DNA from: Leucoraja erinacea
Taxonomy: Eukaryota
Length of the DNA stretch: 64,000 bases
Direction: 5' to 3'
Assembly (NCBI RefSeq): GCF_028641065.1
Contig: NC_073393.1
Location: 15,996,001-16,060,000, forward strand
Made by a program: the position numbers and the translations under genes
Shown: piece by piece, positions 30,443-56,500 of the stretch
Layout: each line of letters begins with the position of its first letter
How positions within the stretch are numbered: position 1 is the stretch's first letter
Notes under the pieces: generated by a model
The model's input: only the letters and a program-made list of their open reading frames with translations
What the model was told of the DNA's origin: nothing
The model's database searches: none

Positions 30443-30550
<108 letters not shown>

Positions 30551-30986: not shown

Positions 30987-31154
<168 letters not shown>

Positions 31155-31314
31155 TGATAACTATAAGTTCTTGAAACATGGTTGATGCTTTATAGAAAGA
31201 TTAGATCTAGTTCAATGCTAAACACAATGTAAAGAACAGTGCTTCCGAAAGTTTGCGACTGTCTCGCTGTTCCCGAGTGCTATTTATTATTAAAACTTAA
31301 AGAAAATGGCTTCA

Positions 31315-33720: not shown

Positions 33721-34107
33721 TTATCTGGTTTAAAAGATCTCCTTTGGCTGAAATGTGATTTTTTTTTGGAATGGAAATAGTCTTGCAGGAATAATTGTAC
33801 TATTTAATCTTATTCTTTGTTATATGTTATGTCACTGGTATGGAGTCAAAAGTATTTCCAGAGACTAATTATGGCATTCCTGTCAACTCACAACAAAACT
33901 GCTTTGGGAACCATTCATTATATTGGAAAAATAAGCTATTATTCTGAGCTACTATAGTCTTGACTAGTATATCAGTGACTTGCTTGGATATCTTGATTTG
34001 CTGTTTGGTTTTCATCCACTGATGGTGATTAGTTCCAATATCTTTTTTAACAGCTGGTGAATAATACATCTAAGTGCCCTGAAACATCATATTTTATATT
34101 AAGATAA

Positions 34108-34284
<177 letters not shown>

Positions 34285-34668
34285 TAGATACCATTTGATT
34301 TGTTGCATTGTCTCAAGTGCTTTGGTAAATGAGTGAAAAGGAAAGCGGCGCAAACAGTTCATATACTGCAAGATCCAATGAACATCAGTTGCATATGTGA
34401 TTGATAAGTTAGACTGTTGCTTGGATTATGTTATTTGACTGTAACATTGGAATTTTGGCATCTGCATAGCAAATGTATAGGAGTTTGGTTAGTCAGTGGC
34501 TTGTATGAAGGGCAACTCTGATGCAATGCTACTTCAATTACTTATAGACTTGAATTTCACCTCTATCTTTGATTTAGATGTTGACAAAAAGTGATGGCTG
34601 ATGTTTGTGATGCAAAAAAAGTGTAATAAGTTGGCTGATATTATGGATGCTTCACCACACCCCAACAA

Positions 34669-34870
34669 TCTCTATACCTATAAAAGTCATCTTGTATTTG
34701 TGTGTATGTGTCTTTTCTACCTTCGTTAAAACGCCACACGCTAGCCACACGCCACAGAAATGTTCACAGATTATTAATCACATTAACCCCATCGACAAAA
34801 TTAACTGCTTCACTTCAATTAATTTATCTTGGCATTGTGTGTGCCGCAACGTTATAGGCCCATTGGCCTC
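34669..34870 (+). mobile_element. Helitron-like non-autonomous fragment
   Basis: a|TCTCTATACCTATAAAAG 5' end, (TG)n, 3' ggcccattggcc hairpin-like segment. Confidence 0.4.
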
Positions 34871-34950
34871 TTCCTGTGCTGCACTGTCTTGTATTTTGGA
34901 TTGTGTTGGTTGGGGTCCAGGTGTTGTGTTGGTTATATTATGCTAAATAG

Positions 34951-35133
<183 letters not shown>

Positions 35134-36300: not shown

Positions 36301-39300
36301 TGATTTTGAAGCAAATCTTCTGATTAATCATTCTTTCCTCCAATTTCACGGTGAACTTTTCAGGGCTGTTTTGTAACCTGGGATGTTAACTGCATGTTTT
36401 GCAGTTAAGTGATATGCTTTGGACCATTGAGGTATATAAACAAGTGATTCTATGCAGCTGTTATAAGGAGTGTGTCGAGGCATTAAATACTTGAATATAT
36501 TCGAACGTGAATTGTTACATCAGCAGCAAAGTGGTGATCTTGGGTATATGTGGATCTTCAAAAATTCTGTCATTATGTATTCTAATTACAGATTGGTTAG
36601 GGATACTTCAAATCACAAATCGGTGCAAAACTGAAATGTGCAATGGTTGTAATTTGATCGAGCGAACATGAAAATCCATTCTTGATGTGGGTCTTGCTTG
36701 CTTTTAAGTTTAATGACCTAGACCTTAGTGTGTCTTTCCAGTTAGTTGGTGTTTGGTTCAATTTTGGGGCAAAAAAACTAATTTGGAAGTTCTCACGTGA
36801 AGAATCATAGTTTATGCTGCACAATTCTAAACTTCAGTTTGGAGGATTTTAATTCCTTTCTTGGTGTATTTCAAATTATTTGATTTCCTTTTCAACAATT
36901 CCAGAAGTTGGTCATCAAAAAGAGTTGGCATTCTCAAAACTAATACCCTGACTTCAGTAACAGATGTCCTTGAATGTTTCAGATAGATGAAATGTTCAAA
37001 ATAACTTTTCTTCCATTGTTACAATATCATTAACACTTTAGAGGTCCTGAGCATTTTTCTATTATGTTGTCTGATTGTTTTTCATTCTGCCAAATGTATT
37101 ACAGCCTCAGCTTTGTAAGATGCTGAACTAAATGAAGAAATACGTTTGCAGAATTATTAGATTTGCTTGTTTAAACTACATTCAATGCTAACTGTTTTGC
37201 CGAAATTGAACAAAAGCATGTTGGGGTGAATTTATTGCAGAGGTGGGGTATTGTGCCTTGGTAAGGGAGAGATGAACAACTGCTGCTTGTATATCCATAA
37301 TGGGTGACTCTGGGCTCCCAATGTATTGTGGGGTACTGTAGGTTAAGAGTTGGGCAGTGGATTTCCTTTTCTCCCCATCTATTGCCCTCGGCAGCCTATC
37401 ACTATACCAATCCCATAATATATAATAGTACTTTAATCACCAGTTAATGGTGGTAGATTATCCTGACTTGTACTTCTAATGCTCTGCAATGTGAACATGT
37501 TATGCCAATGTGGGTTTCCTTCACTTTCCTTCCTCTTTACCGTAAATTGACCCTGGGTTAGCTGAGTAGGAGACGTTGATGGGCATGAGAGAAAAAAGAT
37601 GTAGAAACATGTGGAATAGGACTGCCTAGATATGATATGTGTGTGGCCTGCATTTAAGCCAATGTTAAATGCACCAATCTGTTCTTACTCCCAGAAATAA
37701 TTCTTTAAAATGCTGTTCTCTAAATTCAGCCATTCAATGAGATTATAGACCTTCTCAACTCGATCTATAAGTATCCAAGTCTTTTCGTCCAAATATTTGA
37801 ACAGGTGCAAAAGTCACTTCTCGCAAGGACTTGGAGTGCACCTTGTGGTTCCGCACTGCCCTAATCACTTTAGGGAACAATGCATTTCTCTCCTGGTTTG
37901 TTGGTTGGAAATTTTTTCTGTTTTGTATCAATACAGATGGCAGTCACAACAACTGATAATCTTCAAGCCGTGGATGAATTTGAAAAGACAGTTTTAATTA
38001 AGTGAAAATAAAATTATTTTTATAAAATTGAAGTAACGGGCATTTTCTTATAGAACGTAAGCTCACTTTGTGAAATTTTGATAACATTGCACCAAATGTA
38101 CTGTACAGCAGCATAAATGAGGGAGGATAGGTGTTCATGTTTGCACCTGTATGACACTGGCATTACTGTTCTTGCTTTCGTCTTGGAAAGCACTGGTTAT
38201 TAACACGTCGGCTTCCGATTCTGTCAAGGTATTTCCTCTGTTGCAAATGATAGCGATCCCCGTCCCTGATCTGCGATGTGGATCCTTTCAATTGGACAGG
38301 CAATAAATGGCAAGTGATAAGGTCTTGCATCTTCACTCATTCACAGTACCGTTTCCCCTTTGGAAATATTTATATCTGCGTAGACTGGGTGTTCGTTCTT
38401 GGGTTTAGGTGCTGATTTAATTGATTTGGAAAACTGCAGAGCAGCGTAAGTAGGCTTGTCAGCTTCCCTTCCTTTAGTCTGTGAAAGTCATTAAATATCG
38501 GATGTTAGTAAATACATGAATAGATTTTGTTTTCAAATATCGATCATTGATTAGTATAAGATAGCTACTTTAAGTATTTTTTCTTACTCCAATTTTTAAT
38601 TGTATTTATAAAGCAATATTTATTTTTGCACTTAATGTTCATACTAGGTTATTGCTAGTGTAATCTCCTAGGAAGTGTAGGTAAAGATTTAAAGTACTAC
38701 TTTTTCAGTATGCTAATACATTAGTTCGGCGTTCAACTAGCGTTCGGTGTTCCTTCCCAGAAAGCAAGTCGTGTTTATACATGGCCTGTTACAACCAAGC
38801 TTGCAGGGCCGGGTTCCTGGTTATGGACACGACTCGCCTCTGGCACAACCAGGTGATGCAAAAGTCAGTGACCCAGTAGCAGACTAGCCCATGTGGAAGG
38901 AGCCATCTTAAATATTCGATGGCTGTCTGTGTGCTGCTATCGGGTGGGATGGGGCGAACAGGGAGGCGAGTGTCATACAGTGTGCTGTTATGCAAGATAC
39001 AGTGAGACATCCAGTGAGTGCAGGTCATTGCAACAGAAAAGCAGCTGGGCGGGCACCCTACAAATCCTCCCTCACCTCCTGCTAATTGTGATGGAAGTCG
39101 CTTTGTGGCCCAAATATGTATGTATCATACCTTATCGAGCCGTGAACCTGTCCAAGTGTCTTGTATATTGTAATTGTACTTGCCTCGCACTTCCTCTGGC
39201 TGCTCGCGAATCACCCTTTTGGTGAAAAAGTTGCTCCAAAGGCCCCTTTAATATCCCTCTCCCACCTTAACCCCATTCTCCCTATCCTGGTGAATAGCTG

Positions 39301-40034
39301 TATTTTCACCCCAGAACTGTACACAGTACTCAATGTGACCGTACCAACATCTTAGCCAGCAATAATATGCCCCAACTCCTGTACTCAACCTGACTCATGA
39401 AGACATGCATGCCAAATATTTTCTTCAGCACCCTGTCTACCTGCATCACCATATTCATGGAACTATACTTCTAGGTCTTTCTGTTCTACAGCACTCCTCA
39501 GGGCCTACCATTTATTGTATTAGCCCTGTCCAAGTTTGTCTTGCCAATGTAAAACTTCTGCATTAAACTCCATGTGCCATTCCTCGGCCCATTGTCCCAG
39601 TTCATCAAGATTCTTTTGTGATCTTAGATGTGCTGATGAGACGGGGCCCCTCTCAACCAATGAAGCAGCCCCATTTTCAGCTGTTGAGCCCATTCGTTGC
39701 AAGATATATTCATGATCCCCGCATCTCAGTGCTGAGTGGCTGCGCCTGGACAAAGTACAGCTTCTACAGTACTCATTGTCCTGTGACAATGCAGTCGCAA
39801 GTTCATGGGTACAGAAGCACCAGATTGATGTAGCGGTAGAGTATAGGCCAACCAGATGAATATCCTTTTTTATATAAAGAAATGTAATTGGTCTGAGTTT
39901 TTGGATTCCAAGACTAAGAATGGTTGATAAATTCGAGTAGTGCTCAAACATCAGGGTACAAGATTATGCAAAGTCCCCTGTTGAGATATTTGTGTCTGAT
40001 CACTGATTGAGGGTTTGACTAATATTTACCCTAT

Positions 40035-40358
40035 TCACACAGTGGTGCAGCATTAGAGGTGCTGCCCAAAGATTGGTGCTGCCTTGGTGCCAGAGACCCG
40101 GGTTGGATCCTGACCTTGGACCCTGGGTGCTTGCCTGTCTGGAGTTTGTACGTTCTCCACGTGACGTGTGGGTTTTCTCCTAGAACTTCGGTTTCATCCC
40201 ACACTCAAGACGTATTAGTTTGTAGGTTAATCGGCTTGGTAAAATGTAAATTGTCCCTAGTGTGTGCAGAATAATGTTTATGTACGGGAATCGCTGGTCT
40301 GTGTGACTCAGTTGGCCAAAGGGCTTGTTTCAGCACTGCATCTCTAAACTAAACTAAA
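40035..40358 (+). mobile_element. tRNA-derived SINE (V-SINE/HE1-like)
   Basis: A-box-like agtggtgcagc, B-box-like gggttggatcc, central ggagtttgtacgttctcc, (aaact)n tail. Confidence 0.75.
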
Positions 40359-40599
40359 AAAAATTGCAGCCTTGGTCATATTGCGGATCGGGGCGAGGAC
40401 AATTTGGTTGCACCTTGGCAGAAATCAGTCCACACAGCTAAGAGTATTTGTTAGATTGAAACTGGGATCAAAAGTGAGGGCGATGTCCTTGCACCATGGA
40501 CCTTTACCATGGAAAGAGTCAGTTGGTGAATAATCTAAGCTGCATGTGGACTCATTCCCTGACTGATGAAGGCCAACATACCAAAAGTCATCTGACCAC

Positions 40600-43296
40600 T
40601 CTATCTGTGACACCACTTTCAAGGAATTCTCCCAATTTTGCTAGCCCTTCCTGTCTCCTCCCCTTCCTTAACCCTCAAGTTGTCTCCTCCCATCCCCCCC
40701 CCTGCCCTCTGGCTCCTCCTCCTCCCTTTTTCCTTCCTTCTCTGCCCCCCCCCACCCCCCATCAGTCGGCCCGAAACGTCGCCTATTTCCTTCGCTCCAC
40801 AGATGCTGCTGCACCCGCTAAGTTTCTCCAGCAATTTTGAGTACCTACAATATTAGATCCCTTTGCTCCACAACACTTCCCAGGACCCTGCCTTTCACTG
40901 TGTGGGTCTTTTCCTGGTTTGATTTCCCAAAATGCAACACCTTGTGCTTATCTGCATTTAACATTAACAATTTCTCAGCCCATTTCCCCAACTGATCAAA
41001 TATCTGCGTTATCTACGATACCACCCACTTTAGTGTCACCTGCAAACTTATTAACCATGCCTTGTACATTCTCATTCAAATCATTGATACAAACCACAAA
41101 TAGCAATGGGCCCAGCACTGATCCCTGGGGCATAACACTAGTCACGGGCCTCCAGTCAGACAAACAACCTTTCGCCATCACCTCTGCTTCCTTCCATGAA
41201 GCCAATTCTTTCCAGTACTCCCTGGATCCTATGCAATCTAATGTTTCTCTCCAGTAATTTGCCTACCACAGATATTTGGCTCGCTGATCTATAGTTCCTA
41301 ACATTTTCTTTGCAATGACATTCAGTACCTCCTCAACCATGAGGAAGAAGGGTCTGAAGAAGTGTCTCGACCCCGAAACGGCACCCATTCCTTTTCTCCA
41401 GAGATGATGCCTGTCCCGCTGAATTACTCCAGCTTTTTGTGTGTGCTCCTCAAACATAATACATACTGTCTTCGAGATTTCTATTACTGTTCCAAGTTCC
41501 TCAGTCTCCAGCAAGGAATAGAAACATAGAAACATAGAAATTAGGTGCAGGAGTAGGCCATTCGGCCCTTCGAGCCTGCACCGCCATTCAATATGATCAT
41601 GGCTGATCATCCAACTCATTATCCCGTACCTGCCTTCTCTCCATACCCCCTGATCCCCTTAGCCACAAGGGCCACATCTAACTCCCTCTTAAATATAGCC
41701 AATGAACTGGCCTCAACTACCCTCTGTGGCAGAGAGTTCCAGAGATTCAACACTCTCTGCGTGAAAAAAGTTCTTCTCATCTCGGTTTTAAAGAATGTCT
41801 GGAGGCCTGTGAGTAAGGGTGTGCCTCGGGGATTGGTGTTGGATTCATTGCCGTTTGTGTTGCATGTCAATGATTAGGGCCAGAATATAGAAGATTTTTT
41901 TGGTAAGCTTGCAGATGACATTAAGTCGGTGGTAAAGTAGATAATGAAGATGGTCATCAAATATTACAGCAGGATCTTGATCAGTTAGGCATGTGCAGAT
42001 AAGTGTAAGGTATTGCATGTCGGGAAATAAGTCCAAACATTTTCTGCAGCTCAGACCTGTTTAATGATGATTTGTTTACCTCAGCCCAGATGCTATTTCT
42101 TCTCTAACTTCCCACAGTGTCCTCTGATATATCTGATCAGGTCTGGTAGATTATTCTACATTCATACACCTCAGGACATGCAGCACCTCCTCGATCGTAA
42201 TGTGGGCTGTCAAGACATTTTCATTAACTGTCCCAAGTTCCCAGTCTTCATGTCTGCCTCCATGTTAAAAACAGAGGAGAAATACTCGTTGAGTACCTTG
42301 CCCATCTCCTGCCGCTCCACGCAGAGATGACCACTTTGGTTTCTGTGGGGCCCTATACTCTCTAGTTAGCTTCTTTTGCCTAATATTTTATAAAATCTGG
42401 ATTTACCTTAATATTATTTGCAAGCGTTTCCTCTTGACCACCTGTTGGCCTCCTGATTTCCTTTCCAAGTATGTTCCTGAATGTTCCTTTGCCCACAAAC
42501 AACCTACTTGAATTAAATTTAGCAAATTCCTGTCTAACACCTTAAAAGTTGGCCTTGCCCAAATTCAGAATTTGAACTCATGGGTCCATCCATGAGTCTT
42601 TATCCATAACTATTTTAAAGTTAATAGAACAGTGAGCACTGGTCCCAAAAGGGTAATCTATGAACACATCAGTCACTTCCCTTTCCAATTTCCTTTGGGT
42701 AGATCAAGCTTTGCCCTCTCCTATGTAAGGCCCCTCTACATATTGTCTAAGGTAGCTTTCCTGACCATATTTGACAATTTCCATTCCGTCTAAACTCTAG
42801 GTGTTATGACAATCACAGTCTATATTGAGAATATGAAAATCCCAGATTTGACAACATTAGTCTTGAAGATGCCTGCAATCTCCTGGCATATTTGCTCTTC
42901 TAAATTCCTGTTGATTATTTGGAGGTCTAAAAAACGCTCCCAACAACAATTTCATATTTCCACCCATATAACCTCACTGAACGACGATCAGTAATGTCAT
43001 CTCGGACTACTGCCATTAAGTTCTCCTTAAATAAAGCAACACTACTTCCTCTAACTGCTACCTCTCTCTCCTATAACATCTGTATCCTGTCCCTTTCTTA
43101 GCCAGGTTTCTGTAATGGCTACAATGTCCCGTAGTGACACGCACTGTCACTACACATTACCTATAGACCACTCGCATTAAAATAAATACAATTCAATCCA
43201 ATAGTCTTTCCTCACTCCTTGCCATGCTCCTGCCTATTCTCTCCTCTAAACATTCTCTCAGCATCTGTTTCTCACCTGCCTCAGTCCTGTATTGGA

Positions 43297-43300
<4 letters not shown>
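40600..43300 (-). mobile_element. Decayed CR1 with nested Penelope and CR1 fragments
   Basis: WRPVTSVMPQGSVLGPLLF...KFAGDTKVGG; CR1 tail 41519-41790; hammerhead remnants near 40770 and 41354. Confidence 0.8.

Positions 43301-43341
<41 letters not shown>
43298..43341 (+). repeat. C44 homopolymer followed by a 19-bp tandem duplication
   Basis: Read directly; taacttaaatccacccatg occurs twice. Confidence 0.85.
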
Positions 43342-43344
<3 letters not shown>

Positions 43345-43397
43345 CTTAAATCCACCCATGTAACTTAAATCCACCCATGTAATATTAGCAAAACCTG

Positions 43398-43850
43398 AGA
43401 CAGACACAAAATGCTGCAGTATCTCAGTGGGACAGGCAGCATTTTAGCAGAAAACGGATAGGTGCCGTTTCGGTCCAGGACCCTTCTTCAGACTGATTGT
43501 AGAGAGGGGGGTCTGGAAGCAAAAAAAGACCAGGACAGATCAATGCCAGCAACAGAAAACCCAAGACTAGGTGTTCCTGGATAGGACAATTGTTGTCCCG
43601 GGGTGGTGCGATCCCACGAGGGATACGTAATTGTGAACTGGTTACCTGACATTTAGCTGAGGATCGGGATTGGGGAGGGAGAAGGGGCAGAAAAGTGATG
43701 GGAGGTGAGTATGTAGAAGTTAGCAAAAAATTGTATAATTTAATGTTCATACCACTACCCAAGGGTGAAGCTACCCAAGTGAATTATGAGGAGCTGTTCC
43801 ACCAATTTGCATGTGGTCTTACTCTATCAATGGAGGAGGCCCAGGACCGA
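43398..43850 (-). mobile_element. Penelope-like 3' fragment with degenerate hammerhead
   Basis: SVLGLLH...GMNIKLYNF remnants; cccttcttcagactg at about 43481-43495. Confidence 0.7.
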
Positions 43851-44340
43851 ACCTGCCTCGGGAACTGCTTCGATATTGGTTCCAAACAGTTCAGGTGCAA
43901 CCATCCCTATTGTACAGGTCACCTCTGCCTCAGAAGTGATCCACTGCACCAAGAAACTTGAATCCAAAAATCTAATTTGTAAGTCGTGTTTGAGAACAAT
44001 CACGTTGAAAACCAGGCCTAGAAATGGAAAGGTGTCCGTGGTGACAAATTGTGAAAGCAATCCATCAACGGGGGAGTCGCACCCATGCTGTTTGTACACT
44101 TGCACAGGGTGTCAATTCTAAATATAAACAAAGATACAAGGCTATACCTTTGACTTAAAGAAAGTGAGAGGAGTCAAGAATAGTTGTTAAAGCTGAAGAC
44201 ATGTTCTGCCAGATGGAGGAAAGTGTTAGTTGAGGGGAACTGATTGGATCTCCATAAAAAGATTGGGAATGCCCCGAGACCTTCCTGGTGGGGAATGGAG
44301 ATAGGTATAAGGGATATGGTGTAGATTGGGCAATGGGGGT

Positions 44341-44990
44341 TGTAGATTGACTATTGGATGTTAGCCAATCAGAATGCTTAGTAATAATAACTCTGCCTAG
44401 TGCATGCTTTATGGTGTAAGAACTCGCTTACTGTATTCAGTAGTTGCAGCAGAATGAAGGTATAACGTACTGCATATGTGATACTGGAATGGATATTAAA
44501 GATGCTTATACCTTTACCTGAGTGCGAGTCGGGTAATTACATGGTTATTGGGTCTAACCCACTACGTTCGTTTACCGCTGTTTATTTTCTTTATCAGTTT
44601 TATTTTGTGATTTTTCAACGTTATGGCCAACTCCTGTCGAAAACCGAGTCCCATTGTGTTTTACTGACATAGATGAACGATGGCGCATGTTTGAACGTGA
44701 TTATGCTCACTACATGACCCCGATGATCTGAAGGCATCGCTACTGCTCAATCTAGCGGGTCCAGAATGCTTCGTGCAGCCAACTTCGAGTTTTCCCCAAC
44801 GATAATGGCCAGGTCATTGTGTCAGCAGAATCTATCGACAATCCAACCGTCCTACTCAGAAAATTTTAGAGTTATGTTACCTGCCCCCGAATCGCATCCT
44901 TGAGAGAACAAGGTTTTTTGCCCGACAGCAGCAGATCGATGAACATGACAAACGCTTCATCAGTGACTTAAGGTTAATGATTTGGAGTGC
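44341..44990 (+). mobile_element. Truncated Gypsy element (5' LTR, PBS, gag fragment) downstream of the first cytoplasmic exon of the IgSF gene
   Basis: TGTAGATTG...ATTAAAGATG...TTACA LTR (44341-44541) resembling the element B LTR, then TGG; gag-like DERWRMFERDY, KASLLLNLAG, ERTRFFARQQ. Confidence 0.7.
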
Positions 44991-45151
44991 ATTCTTTGAA
45001 ATTGAAAATAATATTGGTAATTACTCGAAAATGCAAGGTTGATATAAACAGGACAGCTTCCACTGTGCCACAATAATTCTAGATTTTACTCAATGAAATT
45101 AAAATCTTTGCTAAAGAACATTTTTGAAAAAAAAATGGCAATACACCCTAC

Positions 45152-45195
45152 CGTTTCTGCACTTCGACTTGATTCCATCGAATTTTTATTAACAT
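45152..45195 (-). CDS. VJ-C1 IgSF receptor, first cytoplasmic exon
   Basis: gtcttgttttctttag|; DVNKNSMESSRSAET; ACG|GTAGGG; phase 1 in, phase 0 out. Confidence 0.6.
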
Positions 45196-45817
45196 CTAAA
45201 GAAAACAAGACAACAAAATGAATATTGTGTCTTTGAAGAAAATCAAATGTATTGGCTAAAGTAAGAACTCCTGATGGCGCCGTTATATTTGAAACCGTTT
45301 AGCAATAGCGGTTTTTGCAATCTTGTGTTAGTGTATTAACTTCGCATAGTCTGTAATATGTAATCGAACATGACTTTGAATTAAATTATCAAATGGTAAT
45401 AGCGTGTCAGCAGCCGTGTCACATTCCAAAATTACAATGAAAATAAAAAGTGTGGCAAGTTAGAGCAGGTTGCTCACAAACAAAGTCAAGATCCATATCA
45501 AATTCCTTAAGATTCAATAGTTTTAAAGAATAAAATGTAATGTATGAACAATTCCTCTTAGATGTGAAATAAAGACGCAGTCGATGAGCGAATAATTCGA
45601 ATTTTGAAAAAAAAAAAATGTTCCAGCACATTTCAATAGTTAACTGTCATAATGATTTTGTTATGTGAATGATCACCTAATGATGACCTAATGATCACCT
45701 AATGATGACCTACAATGTTTCTTCTTCTGCACTCGACATTTATTAATTCAATGTTCCTGTTTTCTGAAATACTGTTATGATATTAAAGCAATTGGCAAAA
45801 ATAAATAACGGTCTTAC

Positions 45818-45916
45818 CATTTGTTGCCTTTATTCTGAGTACTATCAAAATTATAATCGGGATTAAAATTGCCAATACGCCCACTACACATCCGAGAATC
45901 AGTGCGAGATTAGAGT
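45818..45916 (-). CDS. VJ-C1 IgSF receptor, transmembrane exon
   Basis: cttctcctgcag|; DSNLALILGCVVGVLAILIPIIILIVLRIKATN; G|GTAAGA; 99 nt, phase 1-1; hydrophobic run followed by basic RIK. Confidence 0.88.
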
Positions 45917-46184
45917 CTGCAGGAGAAGCAGATACATTTAAAACTGTAAAACAGATAAACTAAGAAACTGGTGAGAAATTAGGAGTCAGGAAGGCAGAGC
46001 ACTCCGAATGTGTCTTTTTAATCCTTGGTGTACAAGCATTCCAATATATACCGAATGGAACGAATTGCATTATTTGCAAGTTAGCGAATAAATATATATC
46101 GTCTGCTTTGATCTGTCATTTTCAGATCTGACATCTCTTTGTAACCTTCCATATCTCTAGTTTCCCTTTCCACTGACTCTCAGT

Positions 46185-46212
46185 CTGAAGAGGTGTCTTG
46201 ACACGAAACGTC
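46185..46212 (+). ncRNA. Minimal type I hammerhead ribozyme core
   Basis: CUGAAGA-G-GUGU(CUUG)ACAC-GAAAC-GUC; compensatory stem II change relative to other copies. Confidence 0.7.
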
Positions 46213-46849
46213 ACCCATTCCTTCTCTTCGATGATGCTGCTTGACCCGCTGTTACACCAGCATTTCATGTCCATTTTCGGTGTAAACCATCATTTGCAGT
46301 TCCTTCCAACACAGATGTATGGTAAACACGTAAACCGTGTCACAGAATGATCCAGTGAGCTTCTCTCTCTGCATGAAAGTTACTTATGAAGTATAAAGTG
46401 AGACTTGCTTTTATCTTAGCAGATTCCATATTTTAGGACTGGCATATAGCACCTGATTCTACAGCTTTTAAGGTGTAACAAAAGCAATTTACATTTCCGT
46501 GCGGGATTGCAAGCCTTTAACGTGTTAAAATATTTCAAGAAACAGGCAGGCCTTCCAACAAGATTTGCCTCCAAATCGCAGATTATGAGAAATTAGGAGA
46601 GTCAAAGCACGAAAACCGGTCATTCCACCAAACTCACCCATGCCGAGCACGTTGCCCAACCGAGGTAGTCCCAGCTGCCTGTCGTAGGAACTCAACAGGC
46701 TTAGTTGCATTGCTGGAGGGAAATTACGTTTCGAGTAGTGACCCTTCTTTAGATATCCTCCGCAGAAGCTACCTGAAATGCTAAGTATCTCCAGAACTTT
46801 GCAGATGCTGGAAACATTTAAAAAGCAATCTCCTTTACCTCCTACTTAC

Positions 46850-46870
46850 CTGCTCCTGGCACATATGATA
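46850..46870 (-). CDS. VJ-C1 IgSF receptor, putative 21-nt hinge microexon (VSYVPGA)
   Basis: Consensus donor CAG|GTAAGT; pyrimidine-rich ttctaccatttctaccAAG acceptor; phase 1-1, in frame. Confidence 0.55.
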
Positions 46871-47889
46871 CTTGGTAGAAATGGTAGAACATTTAAGGGG
46901 CGGTTATAAGCCAGAAGGGCATTGAGGGGCATAGTGTGGGTAGTTGGTGGCATCATGGACAGGAAACGGATGAGAATAATTACATTTGAATACAACTAGA
47001 CGAATATAGTGACATTTCATGTTGGTAAACTTATAAGGACTAGAGAATAAGGTCAGATGACCTCTCCGGGTGCAAGATTGTGGTCGTTCCTCGATTATAA
47101 TCCAATTCTTGCCCATTGTTCATACCTTTTAATTTTAAAACACAAATGATCTGGGTAAAACTGACAAGGCCAGCACATACAGTTTTCCCAATTCATACTT
47201 GTCCTTCACAATGTGGCAGTGATCAGCCTTTGTGAATCACTGCAGTCCTCTCGAATATAATTCCAGTATTATTGGGTAGGGAGTTCCAGGATCAAATCCA
47301 AGCGACGATACGGCCGATTTATTTACAAGTCATGATGGTGTGTGACTCGGAAGGGAATTTGCAGGAGATGGCGCGTTCCTATGCACCTGTTGCCCTTGAT
47401 CATCATTTTCAAAAACTATTGATCTCAGCTCTGAAATACAACATTATGAATCTGTGATGTTCCGAGGTACGGAATTACAAAGATTCACGTATCTCTGGGA
47501 AGTGAAATTTATCGCCTCAATACAAACGTTAAAAGCCGACTTCCTGTCTTAAAGAAAATATGTCTTGTTCAGAGCAATCTCCTTCCCCATTCGCCATATT
47601 ATGTCACTTTGTAGTCGAGAGTTGAATGTTTGCTTGCTACACCACTGTCAAGTGCCTGAAAGTTTGCTGTTTCACACGCACGATATACATTAAACGTATT
47701 AATTAATCGTCGCAGTTCTAATTGAGAAAATATAGCGCTAAATGATGCATTAGGTTGCTTGCACATCGATATTCTACTGTGAATAAATAGGTTAACATTT
47801 ACTACTCCACGTACAGTATTCGGCCAGATATAATTTCTAAATCGGATCGGAGGTCTCCCTCTGTTCCCAGTTCTGTTTGCCAGTCTTAC

Positions 47890-48180
47890 CTGGCTTGACG
47901 GTGTAGTCGACTCTGGCGGGGACCGCAAGGGAGACATGTGACACTAGGCAGGTGTAAATATCAACGCGCCTGGTAGGCTTTGTTACTTCGAGAAAACTGG
48001 AAGCCACATACAACCCCCCCACGCTACTGGTGTTCACAGGTTCTTCCCCGGTGGAAATTGTTACACCATTTCTTTGCCAGGATATTTTGACTTCCTTCGG
48101 GGAAAAGGCAGCCGTTTGACACACAAGTTTTGGCGGCGAACTGCCATTAACTTGGCTAATGCTCAGGGGAGTTGGCGGAG
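47890..48180 (-). CDS. VJ-C1 IgSF receptor, C1-set exon
   Basis: ttctgttacag|; APPTPLSI...KLVCQTAAFSPKEVKISWQRNG...LYVASSFLEV...YTCLVSHVSL...YTVKP; G|GTAAGA; 291 nt, phase 1-1. Confidence 0.93.
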
Positions 48181-49667
48181 CTGTAACAGAAGGAAAACAA
48201 GTTATGTTGGATGTCTTCTTTCCATGTCAATGAATACTCTGTCGTACGGCTTGTGAAGACATTGCAGTATCATGACCACATGGGTTATCGGTACGTTCAC
48301 TTTTAAACTCGTGGATTTGTCACTGATTTATAGTTCGTCTTACCATGGACAGTAAAATACATTCAAGGAACACATAGGAATGTGATTTTCGATTTAAGTA
48401 ATATGCGGAGAACGTCCCATTGTTCTGAATGGAAGTGCCAGATTTAGCGCGCCGAAGAAGCTGACAGCAATATTTAGTAATTACGCCAGCAATGACTGTG
48501 TTTTACATGTTTGTTGCAAAGAATGATACATGCCCGGTGTCGCCTTCACGCTGACTATTAAACTCCTATTAATTTATCCAATTTTCCTGTCGCATCCATA
48601 TCAACTGTCCTCATTCTTCCCCACCACAATCAATTATCAAGGGATAATTTACCGCTGGCTACCCTACCAACCAGCGAAAAGTTGGCAATGGGTAAGTTAG
48701 CGTAGCAACGGAAGAAAAACCACGAATTTGCGAGGAGATTGTTAAACTGCACACAGACTAACGAATCCTAACGAATCCAGCCCTGTATATATTCACATCT
48801 CGCCAATGCATATGGTCGAGGGGCAGGGTTTGGCTACATCTATCGATCTGAGGTTTGGCCCCATAATAGTTCAAGATACAAGATACAAGGTACAAGGTAC
48901 AATTGTCACATGTGCCAGACTGGGGTTGAGAGTCAGATGAAGTAACTTTCACAAGGAAAACCTTTTCCAGGCCGCGATATACGGTATGATTGAGTTATAC
49001 TGACAATTGGTTGATAATAACAAATAAAGGCGATAGAACGTGAAAGCGACTTCCAATGTGGCAACACATTTTATCTATATCTATGACCTTTTCTAAATTT
49101 GCTCGATATATTGAACGCTCGATTACTTACATGTAAGTAAGGTTCTATTGAACCGAACTCCATATTTGTCATTTACGAACACTGATCTTTCTCAGTTAAA
49201 TCTAGTCAGTGTTTAGCTGGAAGGACAGGTGTATTGTGAGCCCAGTACAAGCAATCTGTTGAACATCTAACTTTTAAATCTTCTTACATTCCATTTTTGT
49301 ACTAACAAGTTATTGAATCAGGATCATTATTGCCTTCGGAAGAGAGTTATGTGTTTATTCTCAACCTCAGCGAGTGCACTACCAGCTAAAACTCAGTTTC
49401 TCCATGGCACAAAAACAGATTATTTTATGTGGAATAAATATTTGTTGCTAAGTTCAGTGACAGCGCCGTTTTACTTGTAGGCATTTCAACCGAGGGTCGT
49501 GTAAATGGAAACCACGATTTGCAAGGACAGGAGCACTGGTGTTTCCTCAAAAGACAATTACATTCTGTTCGTGCTTTACAGATATTTGGCGGTTAAATAA
49601 AAATGCTCGAATACACAAAAATGTAACTCAGCGGGACAGGCAGCATCTCTAGAAAGAAGAATTGGGT

Positions 49668-49695
49668 GACGTTTCGGGTCGAGACCCTTCTTCAG
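49668..49695 (-). ncRNA. Minimal type I hammerhead ribozyme core, sense to the IgSF pre-mRNA (V-C1 intron)
   Basis: CUGAAGA-A-GGGU(CUCG)ACCC-GAAAC-GUC. Confidence 0.7.
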
Positions 49696-50414
49696 TCTGG
49701 AGATGCTGCCTGTCCCGCCGAGTAACTCCAGCGTTTTTTGTCTATCTTTATTACATCCAAATCATGAGAGCTCCCTTTATTCACACGTTTCCTGACTTTA
49801 AGGATAAAACTAATAGATTTCTGAAAATTAGTTATAACAAATACTGGGTAGACAATTTGTAGCGGTTGCGTCAAAAAGGGCAAGATTGTGTGTGGACTGT
49901 GGGTGGACACAGTTCTGGGGAGGTTGTAGCCACAGTTGGCCTGGAATGGTGACTTTTCATTATACATAAGAGCAGACCCAGACTCAATGTGTTAAAATGA
50001 TTCCCGTGAGGAAAAAGCCGCCATACTTCCCACAGTCCAGATTAAATATCCAAGTGGCTTGAGCATCTTCACTGAAAAACAATGTGGTCACTGAGCACCG
50101 TGGGAATGATGAAGAGTGAATCTGAATCGTGGGCGATAGCAGCGCGACTCTACAGAAGGACAAAGGAAAAGGCCCCCTGGAAGCACGAAAAACGAGAACA
50201 ACCCTGCCTCGCCACACACATGCTGCCCGATCAGCTAATTATTTCCAGACATTTCAGATTTCAAGTCGGCGGAGTGGTTTGATTTCATAACATAAAATAC
50301 AGTTATTAGTAATCATCCAGTTTTAACCCAGCGATAAAATGTGATGTTATTCACATTAGAGAGCATAATTTATACTATAGAGAGCTTACGTTCTCTCCGT
50401 CATGGGATACTTAC

Positions 50415-50720
50415 CAATTACAGTCAGCCTGGAGCCAGCTCCATCTCCGATAGATTGCTGCTGATGTTTCACTTTACAATAATAAACCCCGGAGTCCGCT
50501 ACATTTGCATTCAGGAGAACAAAATCCCCACTGCCCTTTTTGGTAGAAATTATTTTTCTGCTGTCTGGTTCTATAAATGTCTTCTCTCCCCATCTCCACC
50601 AAGAAACATCAAGAGTAACTTGTTGTATTGAGAATGTGCAGAACATGGACGCATTGCCTCCTCTGTGGACTGTCAGCTCTTTCGGGAATTGGTCCACTTT
50701 GGTCGAAGTTACTTCGTTGG
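50415..50720 (-). CDS. VJ-C1 IgSF receptor, V-set exon with germline-encoded J motif
   Basis: ctggcag| acceptor; ...KVDQFPKELTVHRGGNASMFC...VSWWRWG...DSGVYYCKVKHQQQSIGDGAGSRLTVI; G|GTAAGT; 306 nt, phase 1-1. Confidence 0.93.
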
Positions 50721-50926
50721 CTGCCAGAAATTAAGGAAAAACACTGAAAACAGTTGCACAAACTGGACAAGGAAAATGAATCAAGAGTTGAAAATTACAA
50801 CAGTAAATTAGAATTAGCGACAAGCGAGCTGGAGAAGCACTGTAACTAAATTCACAGTGGGCAACTAAATGGAGTATTCTAAAACAGAATTGAATATGAT
50901 GGACCGGCACATATATCTAAAAGTAC

Positions 50927-50981
50927 CTTGCCAAACTGTCACCAGAAGGGCCATGTACCGAAATGATGCTTCCACTGTCAT
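50927..50981 (-). CDS. VJ-C1 IgSF receptor, leader exon
   Basis: aatATG; MTVEASFRYMALLVTVWQ; phase-1 donor CAAG|GTACTT; 206-nt intron to the V exon. Confidence 0.7.
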
Positions 50982-51789
50982 ATTATAAGAAAGTTGTTGG
51001 CCGCTTGTGAGCAAATGAGAGAAGTTTCCTAAAAGATCCTTGCAAGAAAGAGTTGCTGGTGAATAAATATTTTCCGCTTGTGACCATGACATAGGATGTC
51101 ACATGACGGTAAAGTGGGTTTCACATTTGGTTCGGTGTTGGTGGAGTGCTAGTGTGAGCGAGGGTCCGCCCCCACTGCCAAGTGAACAGTTTCTATCGGG
51201 GTACAATTCTCTCTCAGACTTCCCTGGATCCATGTTCAAATGATTGACTGACCATTCAGAAGAGAATCGCAGATTTTCCTCATTCGACGCAAGGGACTTA
51301 CAATCTAATATGAACTTTAAAAAAAAATTACCGGGGGAAGGAAGGAGAATGCGGTTGAGAGCGAAGGGTTAATCAGTCACGATAGAATGGCGGAGAAGAC
51401 TCGATGGGCTGAATGGTCTAATTCTGCTTTGATTTATGAGCTTATGAATTTATTTCGTCACCGCACTTCGGGTTTGATGTCTTTCTAATCTCTCTTATGT
51501 TCCATGTCCCAGGGCTTGAAGCCCATTGGAAAAACAACAGGAGTAACTAACCCAGATATTTCTTTCTTTATTTCTTTTGCTTCAACCCAGCCTGATTTTA
51601 ATTGGAATATAAAGCAAGGAAGGATGAACTGAAATGGACGATTAGAAGGACCAAAAGTTGCCACGAGGTGCTTGAAGAAGGGTCCCGAAACGTCACCCAT
51701 TCCTTGTCTCCAGAGATGCTGCCTGTCCCGCGGAGTGACTCCAGTATAAAAGGTGCCACAAAATGGTTTTGGGGAGTCGGATTACATAC

Positions 51790-53500: not shown

Positions 53501-56500
53501 ACCATATAACCATATAACAATTACAGCACGGAAACAGGCCATCTCGGCCCTACAAGTCCGTGCCGAACAACTTTTTTTTCCCTTAGTCCCACCTGCCTGC
53601 ACTCATACCATAACCCTCCATTCCCTTCTCATCCATATGCCTATCCAATTTATTTTTAAATGATACCAACGAACCTGCCTCCACCACTTCCACTGGAAGC
53701 TCATTCCACACCGCTACCACTCTCTGAGTAAAGAAGTTCCTCCTCATGTTACCCCTAAACTTCTGTCCCTTAATTCTGAAGTCATGTCCTCTTGTTTGAA
53801 TCTTCCCTATTCTCAAAGGGAAAAGCTTGCCACATCAACTCTGTCTATCCCTCTCATCATTTTAAAGACCTCTATCAAGTCCCCCCTTAACCTTCTGCGC
53901 TCCAGAGAATAAAGACCTAACTTATTCAACCTATCTCTGTAACTTAGTTTTTTGAAACCCAGGCAACATTCTAGAAAATCTCCTCTGTACTCTCTCTATT
54001 TTGTTGACATCCTTCCTATAATTGGGCGACCAAAATTGTACACCATACTCCAGATTTTCTCACCAATGCCTTGTACAATTTTAACATTACATCCCAGCTT
54101 CTATACTCAATGCTCTGATTTATAAAGGCTAGCATACCAAAAGATTTCTTTACCACCCTATCTATATGAGATTCCACCTTCAAGGAACTATGCACGGTTA
54201 TTCCCAGATCCCTCTGTTCAACTGTATTCTTCAATTCCCTACCATTTACCATGTACGTCCTATTTTGATTTGCCCTGCCAAGGTGTAGCACCTCACATTT
54301 ATCATCATTAAACTCCATCTGCCATCTTTCAGCCCCTTTTTCCAAATGGCCTAATTCACTCTGTAGACTTTGGAAATCCTCTTCATTATCCACAACACCC
54401 CCTATCTTGGTATCATCTGCATACGTACTAATCCAATTTACCACACCTTCATCCAGATCATTGATGTACATGACAAACAACAAAGGACCCAACACAGATC
54501 CCTGAGGCACCCCACTAGTCACCTGCCTCCAACCCGATAAACAGCCATCCACCATTACCCTCTGGCTTCTCCCATTCAGCCACTGTTGAATCCATCTTGC
54601 TATTCCTGCATTTATACCCAACAGTTGAACCTTCTTAACCAACCTTCCATGAGGAACCTTGTCAAAGGCCTTACTAAAGTCCATATAGACAACATCCACT
54701 GCTTTACCCTCGTCAATTTCCCTAGTAACCTCTTCAAAAAATTCAAGAAGATTAGTCAAACATGACCTTCCAGGCACAAATCCATGTTGACTGTTCCTAA
54801 TCAGACCCTGTTTATCCAGATGCTTATATATATTATCTCTAAGTATCTTTTCCATTAATTTGCCCACCACTGAAGTCAAACTAACAGGTCTATAATTGCT
54901 AGGTTTACTCTTAGAACCCTTTTTAAACAATGGAACAACATGCGCAGTACGCCAATCCTCGGGGACTATTCCCGTTTCTAATGACATTTGAAATATTTCT
55001 GTCATAACCCCGGCTATTTCTACACTAACTTCCCTCAATGTCCTAGGGAATATCCTGTCAGGACCTGGAGACTTATCCACTTTTATATTTTTCAAAAGTG
55101 TCAGTACTTCTTTTACTTTGAACCTCGTAGTATCCATAGCTACTCTACTAGTTTCCCTTACCTCACATAATTCAATATCCTTCTCCTTGGTGAATACCGA
55201 AGAAAAAAAATTGTTCAATATCTCCCCCATCTCTGTTGGCTCTGCAGATAGCTGTCCACTCTGTCTCTCCAATGGACCAATTCTATCCCTCGTTATCCTT
55301 TTGCTATTAATATAGCTGTAGAAACTCTTTGGATTTACTTTCACCTTACTAGCCAAAGCAACCTCATATCTTCTTCTAGCTTTTCAAATTTCTTTCTTAA
55401 GATTCTTTTTACATTCCTTATACTCCTCAAGCACCTCATTTACTTCATGCTGCCTATAATTATTGTAGATCTCCCTCTTTTTCCGAACAAGATGTCCAAT
55501 TTCCCTTGAAAACCAGGGTTCTTTCCAATTTTTACTGTTTCCTTTCAACCGAACAGGAACATAAAGATTCTGTACTCTTAAAATTTCCCCTTTAAATGTC
55601 CTCCATTTCTCTTCTACATCTTTCCCATAAAACAAAATGTCCCAGTTCACTCCTTTTAAATCCTCGCATCTCATCAAAGTTAGCCTTTCTCCAATCCAAA
55701 ATCTCAACCCTAGGTCCAGTTCTGACCCTCTCCATAATGATATTGAAACTAATGGTATTGTGATCACTGGACCCGAAGTGCTCCCCAACGCATACCTCCG
55801 CCATCTGTCCCGTCTCATTTCCTAACAGGAGGTCCAGCACTGCCCCTTCTCTAGTAGGTACCTCTATGTATTGTTGCAAAAAACTATCGTGCACACATTT
55901 TACAAACTCCAAACCATCCAGCCCATTTACAGAATGTGTTTCCCAGTCTATGTGTGGAAAATTGAAATCTCCCACAATCACTACCTTGTGCTTACTACTA
56001 ATATCTGCTATCTCCTTACATATTTGCTCTTCCAATTCTCGTTCCCCATTTGGTGGTCTATAATACACCCCTATAAGTGTTGCTACACCTTTCCCACTTC
56101 TCAGTTCCACCCAAATAGCCTCCCTAGATGAGCCCTCCAATCTATCCTGCCAAAGCACTGCTGTAATATCTTCCCTGACTAGCAATGCAACACCTCCACC
56201 TCTTGCCCCTCCAATTCTATCACACCTGAAGCAACGAAATCCTGGAATATTTAGTTTCCAATCACAGCCCTCCTGCAACCATGTTTCACTGATCGCCACA
56301 ACATCATACTTCCATGTGTCTATCCAGACTCTAAGCTCATCCACCTTTCTTACAATGCTCCTAGCATTAAAATATGCACATTTAAGAAACCCCCCGTCTC
56401 TTATTCTCTGGTTATTTCTTTTTTTTTATTTCTCCTCTTGTGTCCGAGTGCTTCTCTTTTCTGCTTCCTGCCTCCCATTCTGTCTACTAGCTTTCTCTAT

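What the first reader, a model, noticed from the sequence alone, without database searches (positions are those of the whole stretch)
45152..50981. Non-rearranging antigen-receptor-like gene: leader, germline-joined VJ, C1-set, hinge, TM, cytoplasmic
Seen: six exons with canonical splice sites, all phase 1 up to the tail, that join into one open frame. The V exon has the B-strand Cys, core Trp, DSGVYYC and a J-type G strand (GDGAGSRLTV) in a single exon, with no RSS. The next exon is a true C1-set domain (LVC..FSP..ISW..NG..Y..S.L.V..YTC.VSH.SL). The leader-V intron is short (206 nt), as in Ig/TCR V genes. Known: C1 domains are restricted to a few jawed-vertebrate families (Ig, TCR, MHC, beta2m, tapasin, SIRP, some B7), and a membrane VJ-C1 molecule is the architecture usually proposed for the pre-RAG ancestor of Ig/TCR. 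Inference: a non-rearranging VJ-C1 receptor of a chondrichthyan, next to AMFR/NUDT21 where I recall no such gene in human. The TM has no charged residue, so CD3/FcRg/DAP12-type pairing is unlikely. It has a Cys within a GxxxG motif (GCVVG), suggesting dimerisation.
Basis: partly seen in the sequence, partly recalled or inferred. Interest (0 to 1): 0.88.

Follow-up and report, generated by a model that had tools for sequence, protein, structure and literature searches.

The report
Skate SIRP-like V-C1 inhibitory receptor gene
This is an intact little-skate gene for a cell-surface receptor with an antibody-like, non-rearranging V domain and one C1 domain; it is one member of a large, automatically annotated but apparently undescribed shark, ray and chimaera family that resembles the inhibitory receptor SIRP-alpha, not a unique relic.

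Summary
On the minus strand there is a split leader (50981-50927), a 206-nt intron, a single-exon V domain with a J-type G strand (50720-50415), a C1-set exon (48180-47890) and an uncharged TM exon (45916-45818). All have AG/GT borders in phase 1, and there is no RSS.

Three amendments:
1. The gene is not an orphan. It belongs to a family of about 100 V-C1-TM proteins in at least 16 chondrichthyan species. NCBI names most of them "SIRP-alpha-like". Family HMMs built without the window score its V at 128 bits and its C1 at 113 bits; the best non-family scores are 24 and 54.
2. It encodes the family's paired tyrosine motifs, so the gene looks like an inhibitory receptor rather than a TCR/BCR-type chain.
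3. The V domain is short (no C'' strand), and the 21-nt "hinge" exon is doubtful.

By sequence the V-C1 unit is about equally distant from Ig light chains, SIRP-alpha and UrIg2.

Four RNA runs gave no reads on any exon, so expression is unproven.

Verdict: a real new member of a known kind, of moderate interest.

The parts
50927..50981 (-). Exon 1: start codon and most of the signal peptide (split leader), 55 nt, ends in phase 1
   Evidence: The ATG is at 50981 and the donor is GTACTT. The hydrophobic core YMALLVTVW aligns with the family leaders.
50721..50926 (-). Intron 1, 206 nt (leader-V intron)
   Evidence: Bounded by the GT at 50926 and the AG at 50721.
50415..50720 (-). Exon 2: germline-joined V(J) domain, 306 nt, phase 1 to 1; a short V lacking the C'' strand
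   Evidence: Pfam V-set scores 36.9 bits. The family V HMM built without the window scores 128 bits. The AF2 model has pLDDT 92.9, and its best Foldseek matches are shark VNAR, CD79b, TCR V-alpha and NKp30. There is no RSS.
47890..48180 (-). Exon 3: C1-set domain beginning with the family linker PPTPL, 291 nt, phase 1 to 1
   Evidence: Pfam C1-set scores 49.6 bits. The family C1 HMM built without the window scores 113 bits. The AF2 model has pLDDT 89.1, and its best Foldseek matches are MHC class II beta2 domains.
46850..46870 (-). Candidate 21-nt 'hinge' micro-exon (doubtful)
   Evidence: It has AG/GTAAGT borders and runs phase 1 to 1. With it, the stalk between C1 and the TM Cys is 17 residues, against 10-12 in relatives; without it, 10. 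No RNA evidence.
45818..45916 (-). Exon 5: short stalk, uncharged transmembrane helix with GCVVG, and stop-transfer RIK; 99 nt, phase 1 to 1
   Evidence: The TM consensus LIxGCAxGGxxIL appears in the family alignments.
45152..45195 (-).
   Evidence: Between the TM exon and the terminal exon there are 234 frame-compatible open AG..GT candidates. Only 3 have a pyrimidine tract of 0.8 or more, and this is the only hydrophilic one. It joins exon 5 to exon 7 in frame.
38341..38478 (-).
   Evidence: tblastn with family tails: P0018 E 5e-6, 53% identity. The family cytoplasmic HMM scores 36 bits, E 9e-11, in a local search of all minus-strand ORF pieces of 8 aa or more in 38200-45900. Translation.

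Best explanation
The locus is an intact member of a multigene family found throughout cartilaginous fishes. The family encodes type I membrane receptors built as follows: split leader; non-rearranging VJ-type V domain (short, without a C'' strand); one C1-set domain; uncharged TM helix with a GCxxG motif; cytoplasmic tail with paired tyrosine motifs.

Shown here: the exons, their domains, family membership and the family's taxonomic spread.

Inferred: the protein acts as an inhibitory immunoreceptor in the manner of SIRP-alpha. The V domain would bind a conserved, non-polymorphic ligand. The V is the better conserved domain (66% identity to a horn shark relative, against about 50-55% for C1). 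After tyrosine phosphorylation, the two tail motifs, 22 residues apart, would dock tandem-SH2 phosphatases (SHP-1/SHP-2 type). In this skate copy both motifs have Pro at Y-2, so they depart from the canonical ITIM/ITSM and signalling may be weakened. The gene is a non-rearranging relative of the antigen-receptor V-C1 unit, but it is no nearer the Ig/TCR ancestor than SIRP or UrIg2.
For: - Exons, phases and splice sites.
- Domains: Pfam V-set and C1-set above their cut-offs.
- Family: the C1 search of 1.84 billion representatives found many 200-400 aa proteins with the C1 at residues about 122-217 and 40-57% identity. They share the V, the PPTPL linker, the TM and tails such as LTYAAL...xxYAEV.
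- Names and species: mostly SIRP-alpha-like, and Chondrichthyes only.
- Membership: family HMMs built without the window score 128 bits (V) and 113 bits (C1), against best non-family scores of 24 and 54 bits. In the trees the window sits in an elasmobranch subclade, with SH-aLRT 92 for V and 99 for C1.
- Tail: the terminal tyrosine-motif exon is in the window. Of 42 family tails of at least 40 aa, 37 hold at least one ITIM/ITSM-like motif and 26 hold at least two.
- Constraint: all family-invariant V and C1 residues are kept in the window.
- Relation to known V-C1 units: the family profile scores SIRP-alpha d1-d2 at 60.3 bits (plus d3 at 44.9), like Ig lambda at 67.5, kappa at 64.2 and UrIg2 at 58.3.
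Against: - No RNA read covers any exon in four RNA-seq runs labelled as the same species. Tissues are unknown, only 1-25% of each run was read, and no unique-locus control was laid.
- The window's C1 has a long terminal branch (0.71, against a median of 0.11).
- Both tyrosine motifs have Pro instead of I/V/L/S/T at Y-2.
- The first tyrosine pair seen in many relatives was not found in the window.
- Exons 4 and 6 are inferred only.
- Ligand, expressing cell type and phosphatase recruitment are all untested.
Confidence: 0.7

Rival explanations
1. The family is the chondrichthyan SIRP family proper: true orthologues or co-orthologues of tetrapod SIRPs that have one C1 domain instead of two. On this reading the finding is simply 'skate SIRP'. 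This overlaps the best explanation; the issue is membership rather than mechanism.
For: - NCBI's pipeline names most members SIRP-alpha-like, and one SIRP-beta-1-like.
- Members have VJ-type V plus C1 plus an ITIM-type tail. From my memory of the SIRP-alpha tail, both have an xTYAxL motif followed about 20-25 residues later by xxYAx(I/V), repeated twice in many members.
- Some members have two C1 domains: P0008 from Amblyraja and probably P0167 from Callorhinchus (3 C1-HMM stretches; its sequence was not read).
- The SIRP-alpha d3 linker VPPT resembles the family's VPPTPL.
Against: - The ectodomain profile does not score SIRP-alpha above Ig light chains or UrIg2.
- The window's C1 alone scores Ig mu, Ig lambda and UrIg2 above SIRP-alpha.
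- The V alone does not list any SIRP among its 60 best solved chains, and its fold is the short VNAR/CD79b type.
- The window's neighbours are AMFR and NUDT21, which from memory lie on human 16q, whereas the SIRP cluster is on 20p13.
- No bony-vertebrate protein reached E 1e-6 in the profile search, though that search depends on shared words.
Confidence: 0.35
2. One reading: a surviving, little-changed descendant of the pre-RAG VJ-C1 membrane receptor from which Ig and TCR arose.
For: - It has a single-exon VJ with a split leader and a short leader intron, a true C1 domain and a membrane anchor.
- The family is present in the oldest jawed-vertebrate lineage, including chimaera.
- The V-C1 unit scores as well against Ig light chains as against anything else.
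- The V fold is nearest to shark IgNAR V and TCR V-alpha.
Against: - The same properties hold for SIRP, UrIg and UrIg2, which are already proposed in this role. UrIg and UrIg2 have the supporting linkage to the MHC and to the Ig/TCR complex (PMC12227049, PMC10751288). This gene lies beside AMFR/NUDT21 instead.
- The ITIM-type tail and uncharged TM are those of an inhibitory receptor.
- There is no evidence of closer kinship to Ig/TCR than to SIRP.
Confidence: 0.1
3. An unexpressed or decaying copy: a recent pseudogene of the family whose frame is still open.
For: - Depth was zero on all exons in four RNA runs.
- The C1 terminal branch is long.
- The tyrosine motifs are non-canonical, and the first motif pair was not found.
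- A 6.7-kb repeat-filled intron lies before the last exon.
Against: - The frame is open through all seven proposed exons, with AG/GT at every border.
- Every family-invariant residue of V and C1 is kept.
- The HMM scores lie inside the family range.
- Relatives of this kind can be tissue-restricted: UrIg2 is expressed mainly in gill and liver (PMC12227049). The tissues of the runs are unknown.
Confidence: 0.15

Closest known systems
SIRP-alpha (SHPS-1) and the SIRP family
   Same: Both have a non-rearranging VJ-type V domain followed by C1-set domain(s), a type I membrane topology and an uncharged TM. Both have a tail with paired tyrosine motifs about 20-25 residues apart. The family profile aligns SIRP-alpha d1-d2 at 60.3 bits and d3 at 44.9 bits. 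Automatic annotation calls most members SIRP-alpha-like. SIRP has been discussed as a link to antigen-receptor precursors (PMC2785349).
   Different: Most members here have one C1 domain, not two. The V is short and lacks the C'' strand; SIRP is not among its best sequence or fold matches. Sequence distance to SIRP is no smaller than to Ig light chains or UrIg2. The neighbours are AMFR/NUDT21. The family was found only in Chondrichthyes.
UrIg and UrIg2 (elasmobranch non-rearranging Ig-like genes)
   Same: Both have a single-exon VJ with a split leader followed by C1-type domains, and both occur in elasmobranchs. UrIg2 (PDB 9dmx) is among the best solved matches of the window's C1 (E 3e-14) and of the family profile.
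   Different: UrIg has three C domains and is secreted. UrIg2 has up to 9-11 C domains. They are linked to the MHC and to the Ig/TCR complex respectively, and no ITIM-type tail is described for them (PMC12227049). This gene has one C1, an ITIM-type tail and a different linkage.
Ig light chains and TCR chains
   Same: Both have a V-C1 unit with a J-type G strand. Ig lambda and kappa V-C units score 64-91 bits against the family profile.
   Different: There are no RSS and no separate V and J segments. The TM has no charged residues for CD3 or CD79 pairing, there is no membrane-proximal interchain Cys, and a signalling tail is present.
IgNAR V domain, CD79b and NKp30 (V-domain fold only)
   Same: These are the best Foldseek matches of the modelled V domain, with TM-scores of 0.74-0.81. 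They share its compact V without a C'' strand and/or its VJ-type G strand.
   Different: These proteins have no C1 domain following the V (CD79b, NKp30), or they are rearranging (IgNAR). Identity is only 18-31%.
Lamprey TCR-like gene and PRARP genes (recalled from memory, not tested)
   Same: These are non-rearranging VJ receptors with ITIM-type tails that have been proposed as remnants of receptor precursors.
   Different: As I recall, their second domain is C2-type, not C1.

Membership tests
Non-rearranging VJ-C1 IgSF genes (architectural class) | V domain and J-type G strand (GxGxxLxV) encoded in one exon, with no RSS | tested here: met
   One open 306-nt exon runs from the B-strand Cys to GAGSRLTV and a GT donor. 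The RSS scan was negative.
Non-rearranging VJ-C1 IgSF genes (architectural class) | A C1-set constant domain following the V | tested here: met
   Pfam C1-set scores 49.6 bits against a cut-off of 21. The AF2 model's best Foldseek matches are all C1 domains of MHC class II beta chains.
Unnamed chondrichthyan 'SIRP-alpha-like' V-C1-TM family | V and C1 score within the family range against family profiles built without the query | tested here: met
   V scores 128 bits and C1 scores 113 bits. Family ranges are about 45-136 and 87-142 bits; the best non-family scores are 24 and 54 bits.
Unnamed chondrichthyan 'SIRP-alpha-like' V-C1-TM family | Placement inside the family in V and C1 trees | tested here: met
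   The window lies inside an elasmobranch subclade, with SH-aLRT 92 for V and 99 for C1. These are quick trees on about 100 columns, and no one-to-one orthologue is resolved.
Unnamed chondrichthyan 'SIRP-alpha-like' V-C1-TM family | PPTPL linker, uncharged TM with a GCxxG-type motif, and a tail with xTYAxL ... xxYAx(I/V) | tested here: met
   The window has PPTPL, GCVVG, PTYAAL and PVYADI. Only the second motif pair was found, and both motifs have Pro at Y-2.
SIRP family | Three-domain V-C1-C1 ectodomain | tested here: not met
   The window has a single C1 exon, and no second C1 lies anywhere in the 64 kb.
SIRP family | SIRPs are the nearest relatives by sequence | tested here: inconclusive
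   V-C1 unit scores against the family profile are: SIRP-alpha 60.3, Ig lambda 67.5, Ig kappa 64.2 and UrIg2 58.3 bits. No curated SIRP set was available for a tree.
SIRP family | Cytoplasmic ITIM pairs that recruit SHP-1/SHP-2 | not testable with these tools
   Motif arrangement is similar across the family.
SIRP family | Conserved synteny with the SIRP locus | not testable with these tools
The window shows only AMFR and NUDT21 as neighbours.
UrIg / UrIg2 | VJ followed by three or more C1-type domains, with linkage to the MHC or the Ig/TCR complex | tested here: not met
   The window has one C1 domain, and its neighbours are AMFR and NUDT21. Features of UrIg and UrIg2 are taken from PMC12227049.
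Rearranging Ig/TCR chains | Separate V and J segments flanked by RSS, and a TM with charged residues for CD79 or CD3 assembly | tested here: not met
   V and J are joined in the germline, no RSS is present, and the TM has no charged residue.

The most novel reading that the evidence does not exclude
The chondrichthyan V-C1-TM family, of which this gene is one member, is not a SIRP offshoot. It is an independent, ancient line descending from the pre-RAG membrane VJ-C1 receptor. It would have kept that receptor's original form: one V, one C1, and an inhibitory tail on a non-lymphoid cell. That would fit the suggestion, made from the SIRP-alpha structure (PMC2785349), that the primitive antigen receptor had both V- and C1-set domains and was expressed on myeloid cells; that this receptor was inhibitory is my own addition.
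Probability: 0.1. Interest if true: 0.8.

Novelty: new member of a known kind. Interest (0 to 1): 0.45.

Why it matters
Membrane proteins that join a VJ-type V domain to a C1-set domain are few, and they are central to arguments about how Ig and TCR arose. This gene shows that cartilaginous fishes carry a large family of such receptors, spread across chimaeras, sharks and rays. The family has SIRP-alpha-like inhibitory tails and a compact V domain that resembles IgNAR V in fold. It sits in databases under a mix of automatic names (SIRP-alpha-like, NCR3LG1-like, TCR-beta-like, Ig-lambda-like, tapasin-related-like). I found no paper on it in the searchable library.

A proper description of the family would cover phylogeny against SIRP, UrIg and Ig/TCR, chromosomal location, expressing cells and ligand. 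That would show whether SIRP-type receptors date back to the base of jawed vertebrates. It would also add a third non-rearranging V-C1 lineage to compare with UrIg and UrIg2. The single gene in this window is an ordinary member of the family.

Tried and rejected
- **RNA evidence.** Four RNA runs (X6, X10, X13, X4) were laid on 45100-51050. Only two intronic repeats (46095-46293 and 49478-49875) gathered reads, and no exon was covered. This neither supports nor refutes expression.
- **V exon alone against the 5.8-billion-protein index.** Nothing was found. That search only sees proteins of 55-177 aa, so it means little.
- **C1 homodimer.** Complex prediction on two copies of the window's C1 returned 'no answer' (score 0.03). 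This is no evidence either way.
- **First tyrosine-motif pair and other tail exons between 45.8 and 38.5 kb.** A regex scan and a family HMM run with filters off found only the terminal exon.
- **Other Ig-like exons.** A six-frame screen and tblastn with family members found no second family V or C1 exon in the 64 kb.
- **Literature.** Searches for SIRP in sharks, VJ-C1, PRARP and antigen receptor precursor found no description of this family. A further search failed on a term under three letters. The PRARP and first UrIg papers are not held.
- **Considered and rejected:**
  - B7-H6/NCR3LG1-like ligand: B7 V domains lack the J-type strand and the ITIM pair.
  - CD79-like: CD79 has no C1 domain and carries an ITAM rather than this tail.
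  - Germline-joined Ig/TCR cluster gene: the TM is uncharged, a signalling tail is present, and the gene sits within the family.
- **Joined protein.** The spliced protein was not sent to any search, fold or complex tool. All searches used single exons by reference. A script checked only that the joined frame stays open.

Full report
**1. What is in the sequence**

The gene lies on the minus strand. The window holds no N.
- Exon 1 runs 50981-50927. It has an ATG, codes for 18 residues of a hydrophobic leader, and ends in phase 1 at a GT donor.
- Exon 2 (50720-50415, 306 nt) and exon 3 (48180-47890, 291 nt) both have pyrimidine-rich AG acceptors and GTAAG donors. Both run phase 1 to phase 1.
- Exon 2 translates without a stop, from the A strand through the B-strand Cys, WW, DSGVYYC and on to GDGAGSRLTV. 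V and J are therefore joined in the germline.
- An RSS scan of the gene found no heptamer-spacer-nonamer on either strand. There is only a lone CACTGTG in intron 1.
- Pfam places exon 2 in V-set (36.9 bits, cut-off 26; I-set 33.6) and exon 3 in C1-set (49.6 bits, cut-off 21).

- AMFR exon 1 lies at about 16.4-16.5 kb on the minus strand. I identified it from its N-terminal translation, recalled from memory.
- NUDT21 exons run from 25.0 to 35.1 kb on the plus strand. Pfam NUDIX_2 scores 82.9 and 47.9 bits on two of them.

**2. Structure models**

I aligned each exon, given by reference, with relatives and folded it.
- The V model is confident (pLDDT 92.9). It has strands A, A', B, C, a vestigial C', then D, E, F and a G strand kinked at GxG. 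There is no C'' strand.
- Its best Foldseek matches are shark IgNAR V domains, CD79b, TCR V-alpha, NKp30 and V-lambda. All have E near 1e-8 and TM-scores of 0.74-0.81. No SIRP is among the first 50.
- The C1 model (pLDDT 89.1) matches MHC class II beta2 domains best, with TM-scores around 0.8. The C1 assignment is sound.

**3. The gene is one of a large family**

I searched the C1 exon against 1.84 billion representative proteins. It returned many proteins of 200-400 residues that match once, at residues about 122-217, with 40-57% identity. Their sequences share these features:
- a leader and a V domain with WW(K/R)xGE and GNGxGSxLxV;
- the linker VPPTPL;
- a C1 with CxTAAFYPE, TGI, GLYEVSS and VYTCLVSHxSL;
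- an uncharged TM with a GCAxGG-type motif;
- in the long forms, tails such as ...TAYATLNL...RTVYAQTKQ...KLTYAALQL...xxYAEV.

- Most members are called 'tyrosine-protein phosphatase non-receptor type substrate 1-like' (SIRP-alpha-like).
- Others are called NCR3LG1-like, TCR beta chain-like, Ig lambda-like, tapasin-related-like, PD-L1-like, CD276 homolog or uncharacterized.
- Every named member is chondrichthyan. Species are Callorhinchus (chimaera); Heterodontus, Scyliorhinus canicula and S. torazame, Heptranchias, Carcharodon, Mustelus and Chiloscyllium (sharks); and Mobula (two species), Narcine, Pristis, Hypanus, Hemitrygon and Amblyraja (batoids).
- Within a species nearly all members lie on one chromosome-sized record each (a few on small scaffolds or with no record given), often with consecutive accession numbers. 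This suggests gene clusters.
- A profile search with 26 members found 47 proteins at E <= 1e-6. All 46 that carry a source name are chondrichthyan; the remaining one is an unnamed ENA entry. That search depends on shared words, so absence from bony vertebrates is not proven.

Membership of the window gene is clear.
- HMMs built from relatives only score the window's V at 128 bits and its C1 at 113 bits.
- These lie within the family ranges. The best non-family proteins among those fetched reach only 24 and 54 bits.
- Nearest relatives are a Heterodontus protein (V 67%, C1 52% identity) and a Pristis protein (V 62%, C1 53%).
- Quick maximum-likelihood trees put the window inside an elasmobranch subclade, with SH-aLRT 92 for V and 99 for C1. 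They resolve no one-to-one orthologue. The window's C1 branch is long (0.71, against a median of 0.11).
- All family-invariant residues of both domains are kept in the window.

**4. The 3' half of the gene**

- The TM exon is 45916-45818. It encodes SNLALILGCVVG...RIKATN and runs phase 1 to 1.
It encodes ...KPTYAALQF...(22 residues between the tyrosines)...PVYADI... and a stop.
- A family tail HMM scores this exon at 36 bits (E 9e-11), against all minus-strand ORF pieces of 8 aa or more in 38200-45900. Nothing else in that stretch scores.
- Its acceptor is in phase 0, so a connecting exon running phase 1 to 0 is needed.
- Of 234 frame-compatible open candidates, three have a strong pyrimidine tract.
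- With these exons the frame stays open for 317 codons.
- The 21-nt 'hinge' exon (46870-46850) has good signals. It makes the stalk longer than in any close relative, and C1 joins the TM exon in frame without it. I rate it doubtful.
- The first tyrosine pair seen in many relatives was not found in the window.

The joined protein was not sent to any search or fold. Every search used single exons by reference. The script only checked the frame.

**5. Expression**

- Depth was zero on every exon.
- Thousands of reads fell only on two intronic repeats, 46095-46293 and 49478-49875, which are inverted copies of one repeat family.
- A handful of X6 reads lie in the intron at 47090-47885. They are too few to interpret.
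- Only 1-25% of each run was read, and no unique expressed control (such as NUDT21) lay in the stretch.
- The related UrIg2 is expressed mainly in gill and liver (PMC12227049).

Expression therefore remains open.

**6. Relation to known families**

The family profile, searched against all solved chains, gives these scores for the V-C1 unit:

| Chain | Bits |
|---|---|
| Ig lambda | 67.5 |
| Ig kappa | 64.2 |
| One light chain, including its leader | 91 |
| SIRP-alpha d1-d2 | 60.3 (plus 44.9 for d3) |
| UrIg2 V-C1 | 58.3 |

- The window's C1 alone ranks Ig mu, UrIg2 (9dmx, E 3e-14) and Ig lambda above SIRP-alpha (E 8.5e-9).
- By sequence, then, the ectodomain is a generic antigen-receptor-type V-C1 unit, about equally far from IgL, SIRP and UrIg2.
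- What sets it beside SIRP-alpha is the whole architecture. It has VJ-type V, C1, an uncharged TM, and a tail with tyrosine motifs in pairs about 20-25 residues apart.
- From my memory of the SIRP-alpha tail (ITYADL ... TEYASI, twice), the family's arrangement is the same. I could not test this, because no tool supplied that tail.
- SIRP was already proposed as a link to antigen-receptor precursors because of its V-C1-C1 structure (PMC2785349). UrIg and UrIg2 are published elasmobranch non-rearranging VJ-C genes with supporting linkage to the MHC and to the Ig/TCR complex (PMC12227049, PMC10751288).
- The present gene differs from UrIg/UrIg2 in having one C1, an ITIM-type tail and a different linkage.
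- It differs from Ig/TCR in having no RSS, no charged TM residue and a signalling tail.

**7. How it most likely works**

- *Shown:* an intact gene for a type I membrane protein with a VJ-type V domain, a C1 domain, a TM helix and a tail with two tyrosine motifs. It belongs to a chondrichthyan family in which 37 of 42 long tails carry ITIM/ITSM-like motifs.
- *Inferred:* an inhibitory receptor that binds a conserved ligand through the V domain, which is more conserved than the C1. After tyrosine phosphorylation it would recruit tandem-SH2 phosphatases.
- *Caveats:* both skate motifs have Pro at Y-2, and the ligand, cell type and oligomeric state are unknown.
- C1 domains usually pair, and the GCxxG motif suggests TM-helix contacts. 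The single complex prediction (two copies of the C1) gave no answer, so I make no claim of dimerisation.

**8. Verdict**

The gene is a new member of a known kind: SIRP-type non-rearranging V-C1 receptors.

Noticed in passing
window 16049-16747 (-) and 25020-35133 (+): AMFR exon 1 (minus strand) and NUDT21 (plus strand) are arranged head to head, about 8.5 kb apart. The receptor gene lies tail to tail with NUDT21: its last exon (38341) is only about 3.2 kb from the end of the NUDT21 coding sequence, so the two 3' UTRs may converge or overlap.
   Followed up: partly
window 46095-46293 and 49478-49875: Two intronic copies of one short interspersed repeat lie in opposite orientation. Reads join them as 'opposite strands'. 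They gather hundreds to thousands of RNA reads at 95-99% identity, on both strands, in all four runs. The repeat family is therefore abundant in skate transcripts. A copy also occurs near 51,5xx-51,8xx and elsewhere in the window.
   Followed up: no
window 54019-56425 (-): A LINE with long open frames lies upstream of the receptor gene. It has a 455-aa reverse-transcriptase ORF (54019-55383) and a 277-aa endonuclease-like ORF (55595-56425). It may be a young element.
   Followed up: no
window 18355-22220: Retroelement pieces with integrase-like ORFs lie in the AMFR-NUDT21 intergenic region: for example 21522-22220 (+), 233 aa, and 19314-19736 (-). The local GC content is raised (0.50-0.54).
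   Followed up: no
family proteins P0008 (Amblyraja) and P0167 (Callorhinchus): P0008 has two tandem, nearly identical C1 domains after the V, which looks like a recent exon duplication. P0167 (489 aa) gave three C1-HMM stretches, but I did not read its sequence. Many species have short-tailed forms without tyrosine motifs (e.g. P0155, P0153, P0160), reminiscent of SIRP-alpha versus SIRP-gamma. No member with a charged TM residue was noticed.
   Followed up: partly
window 45670-45715: A short tandem repeat (units atgatcaccta / atgatgaccta) lies in the intron after the TM exon.
   Followed up: no
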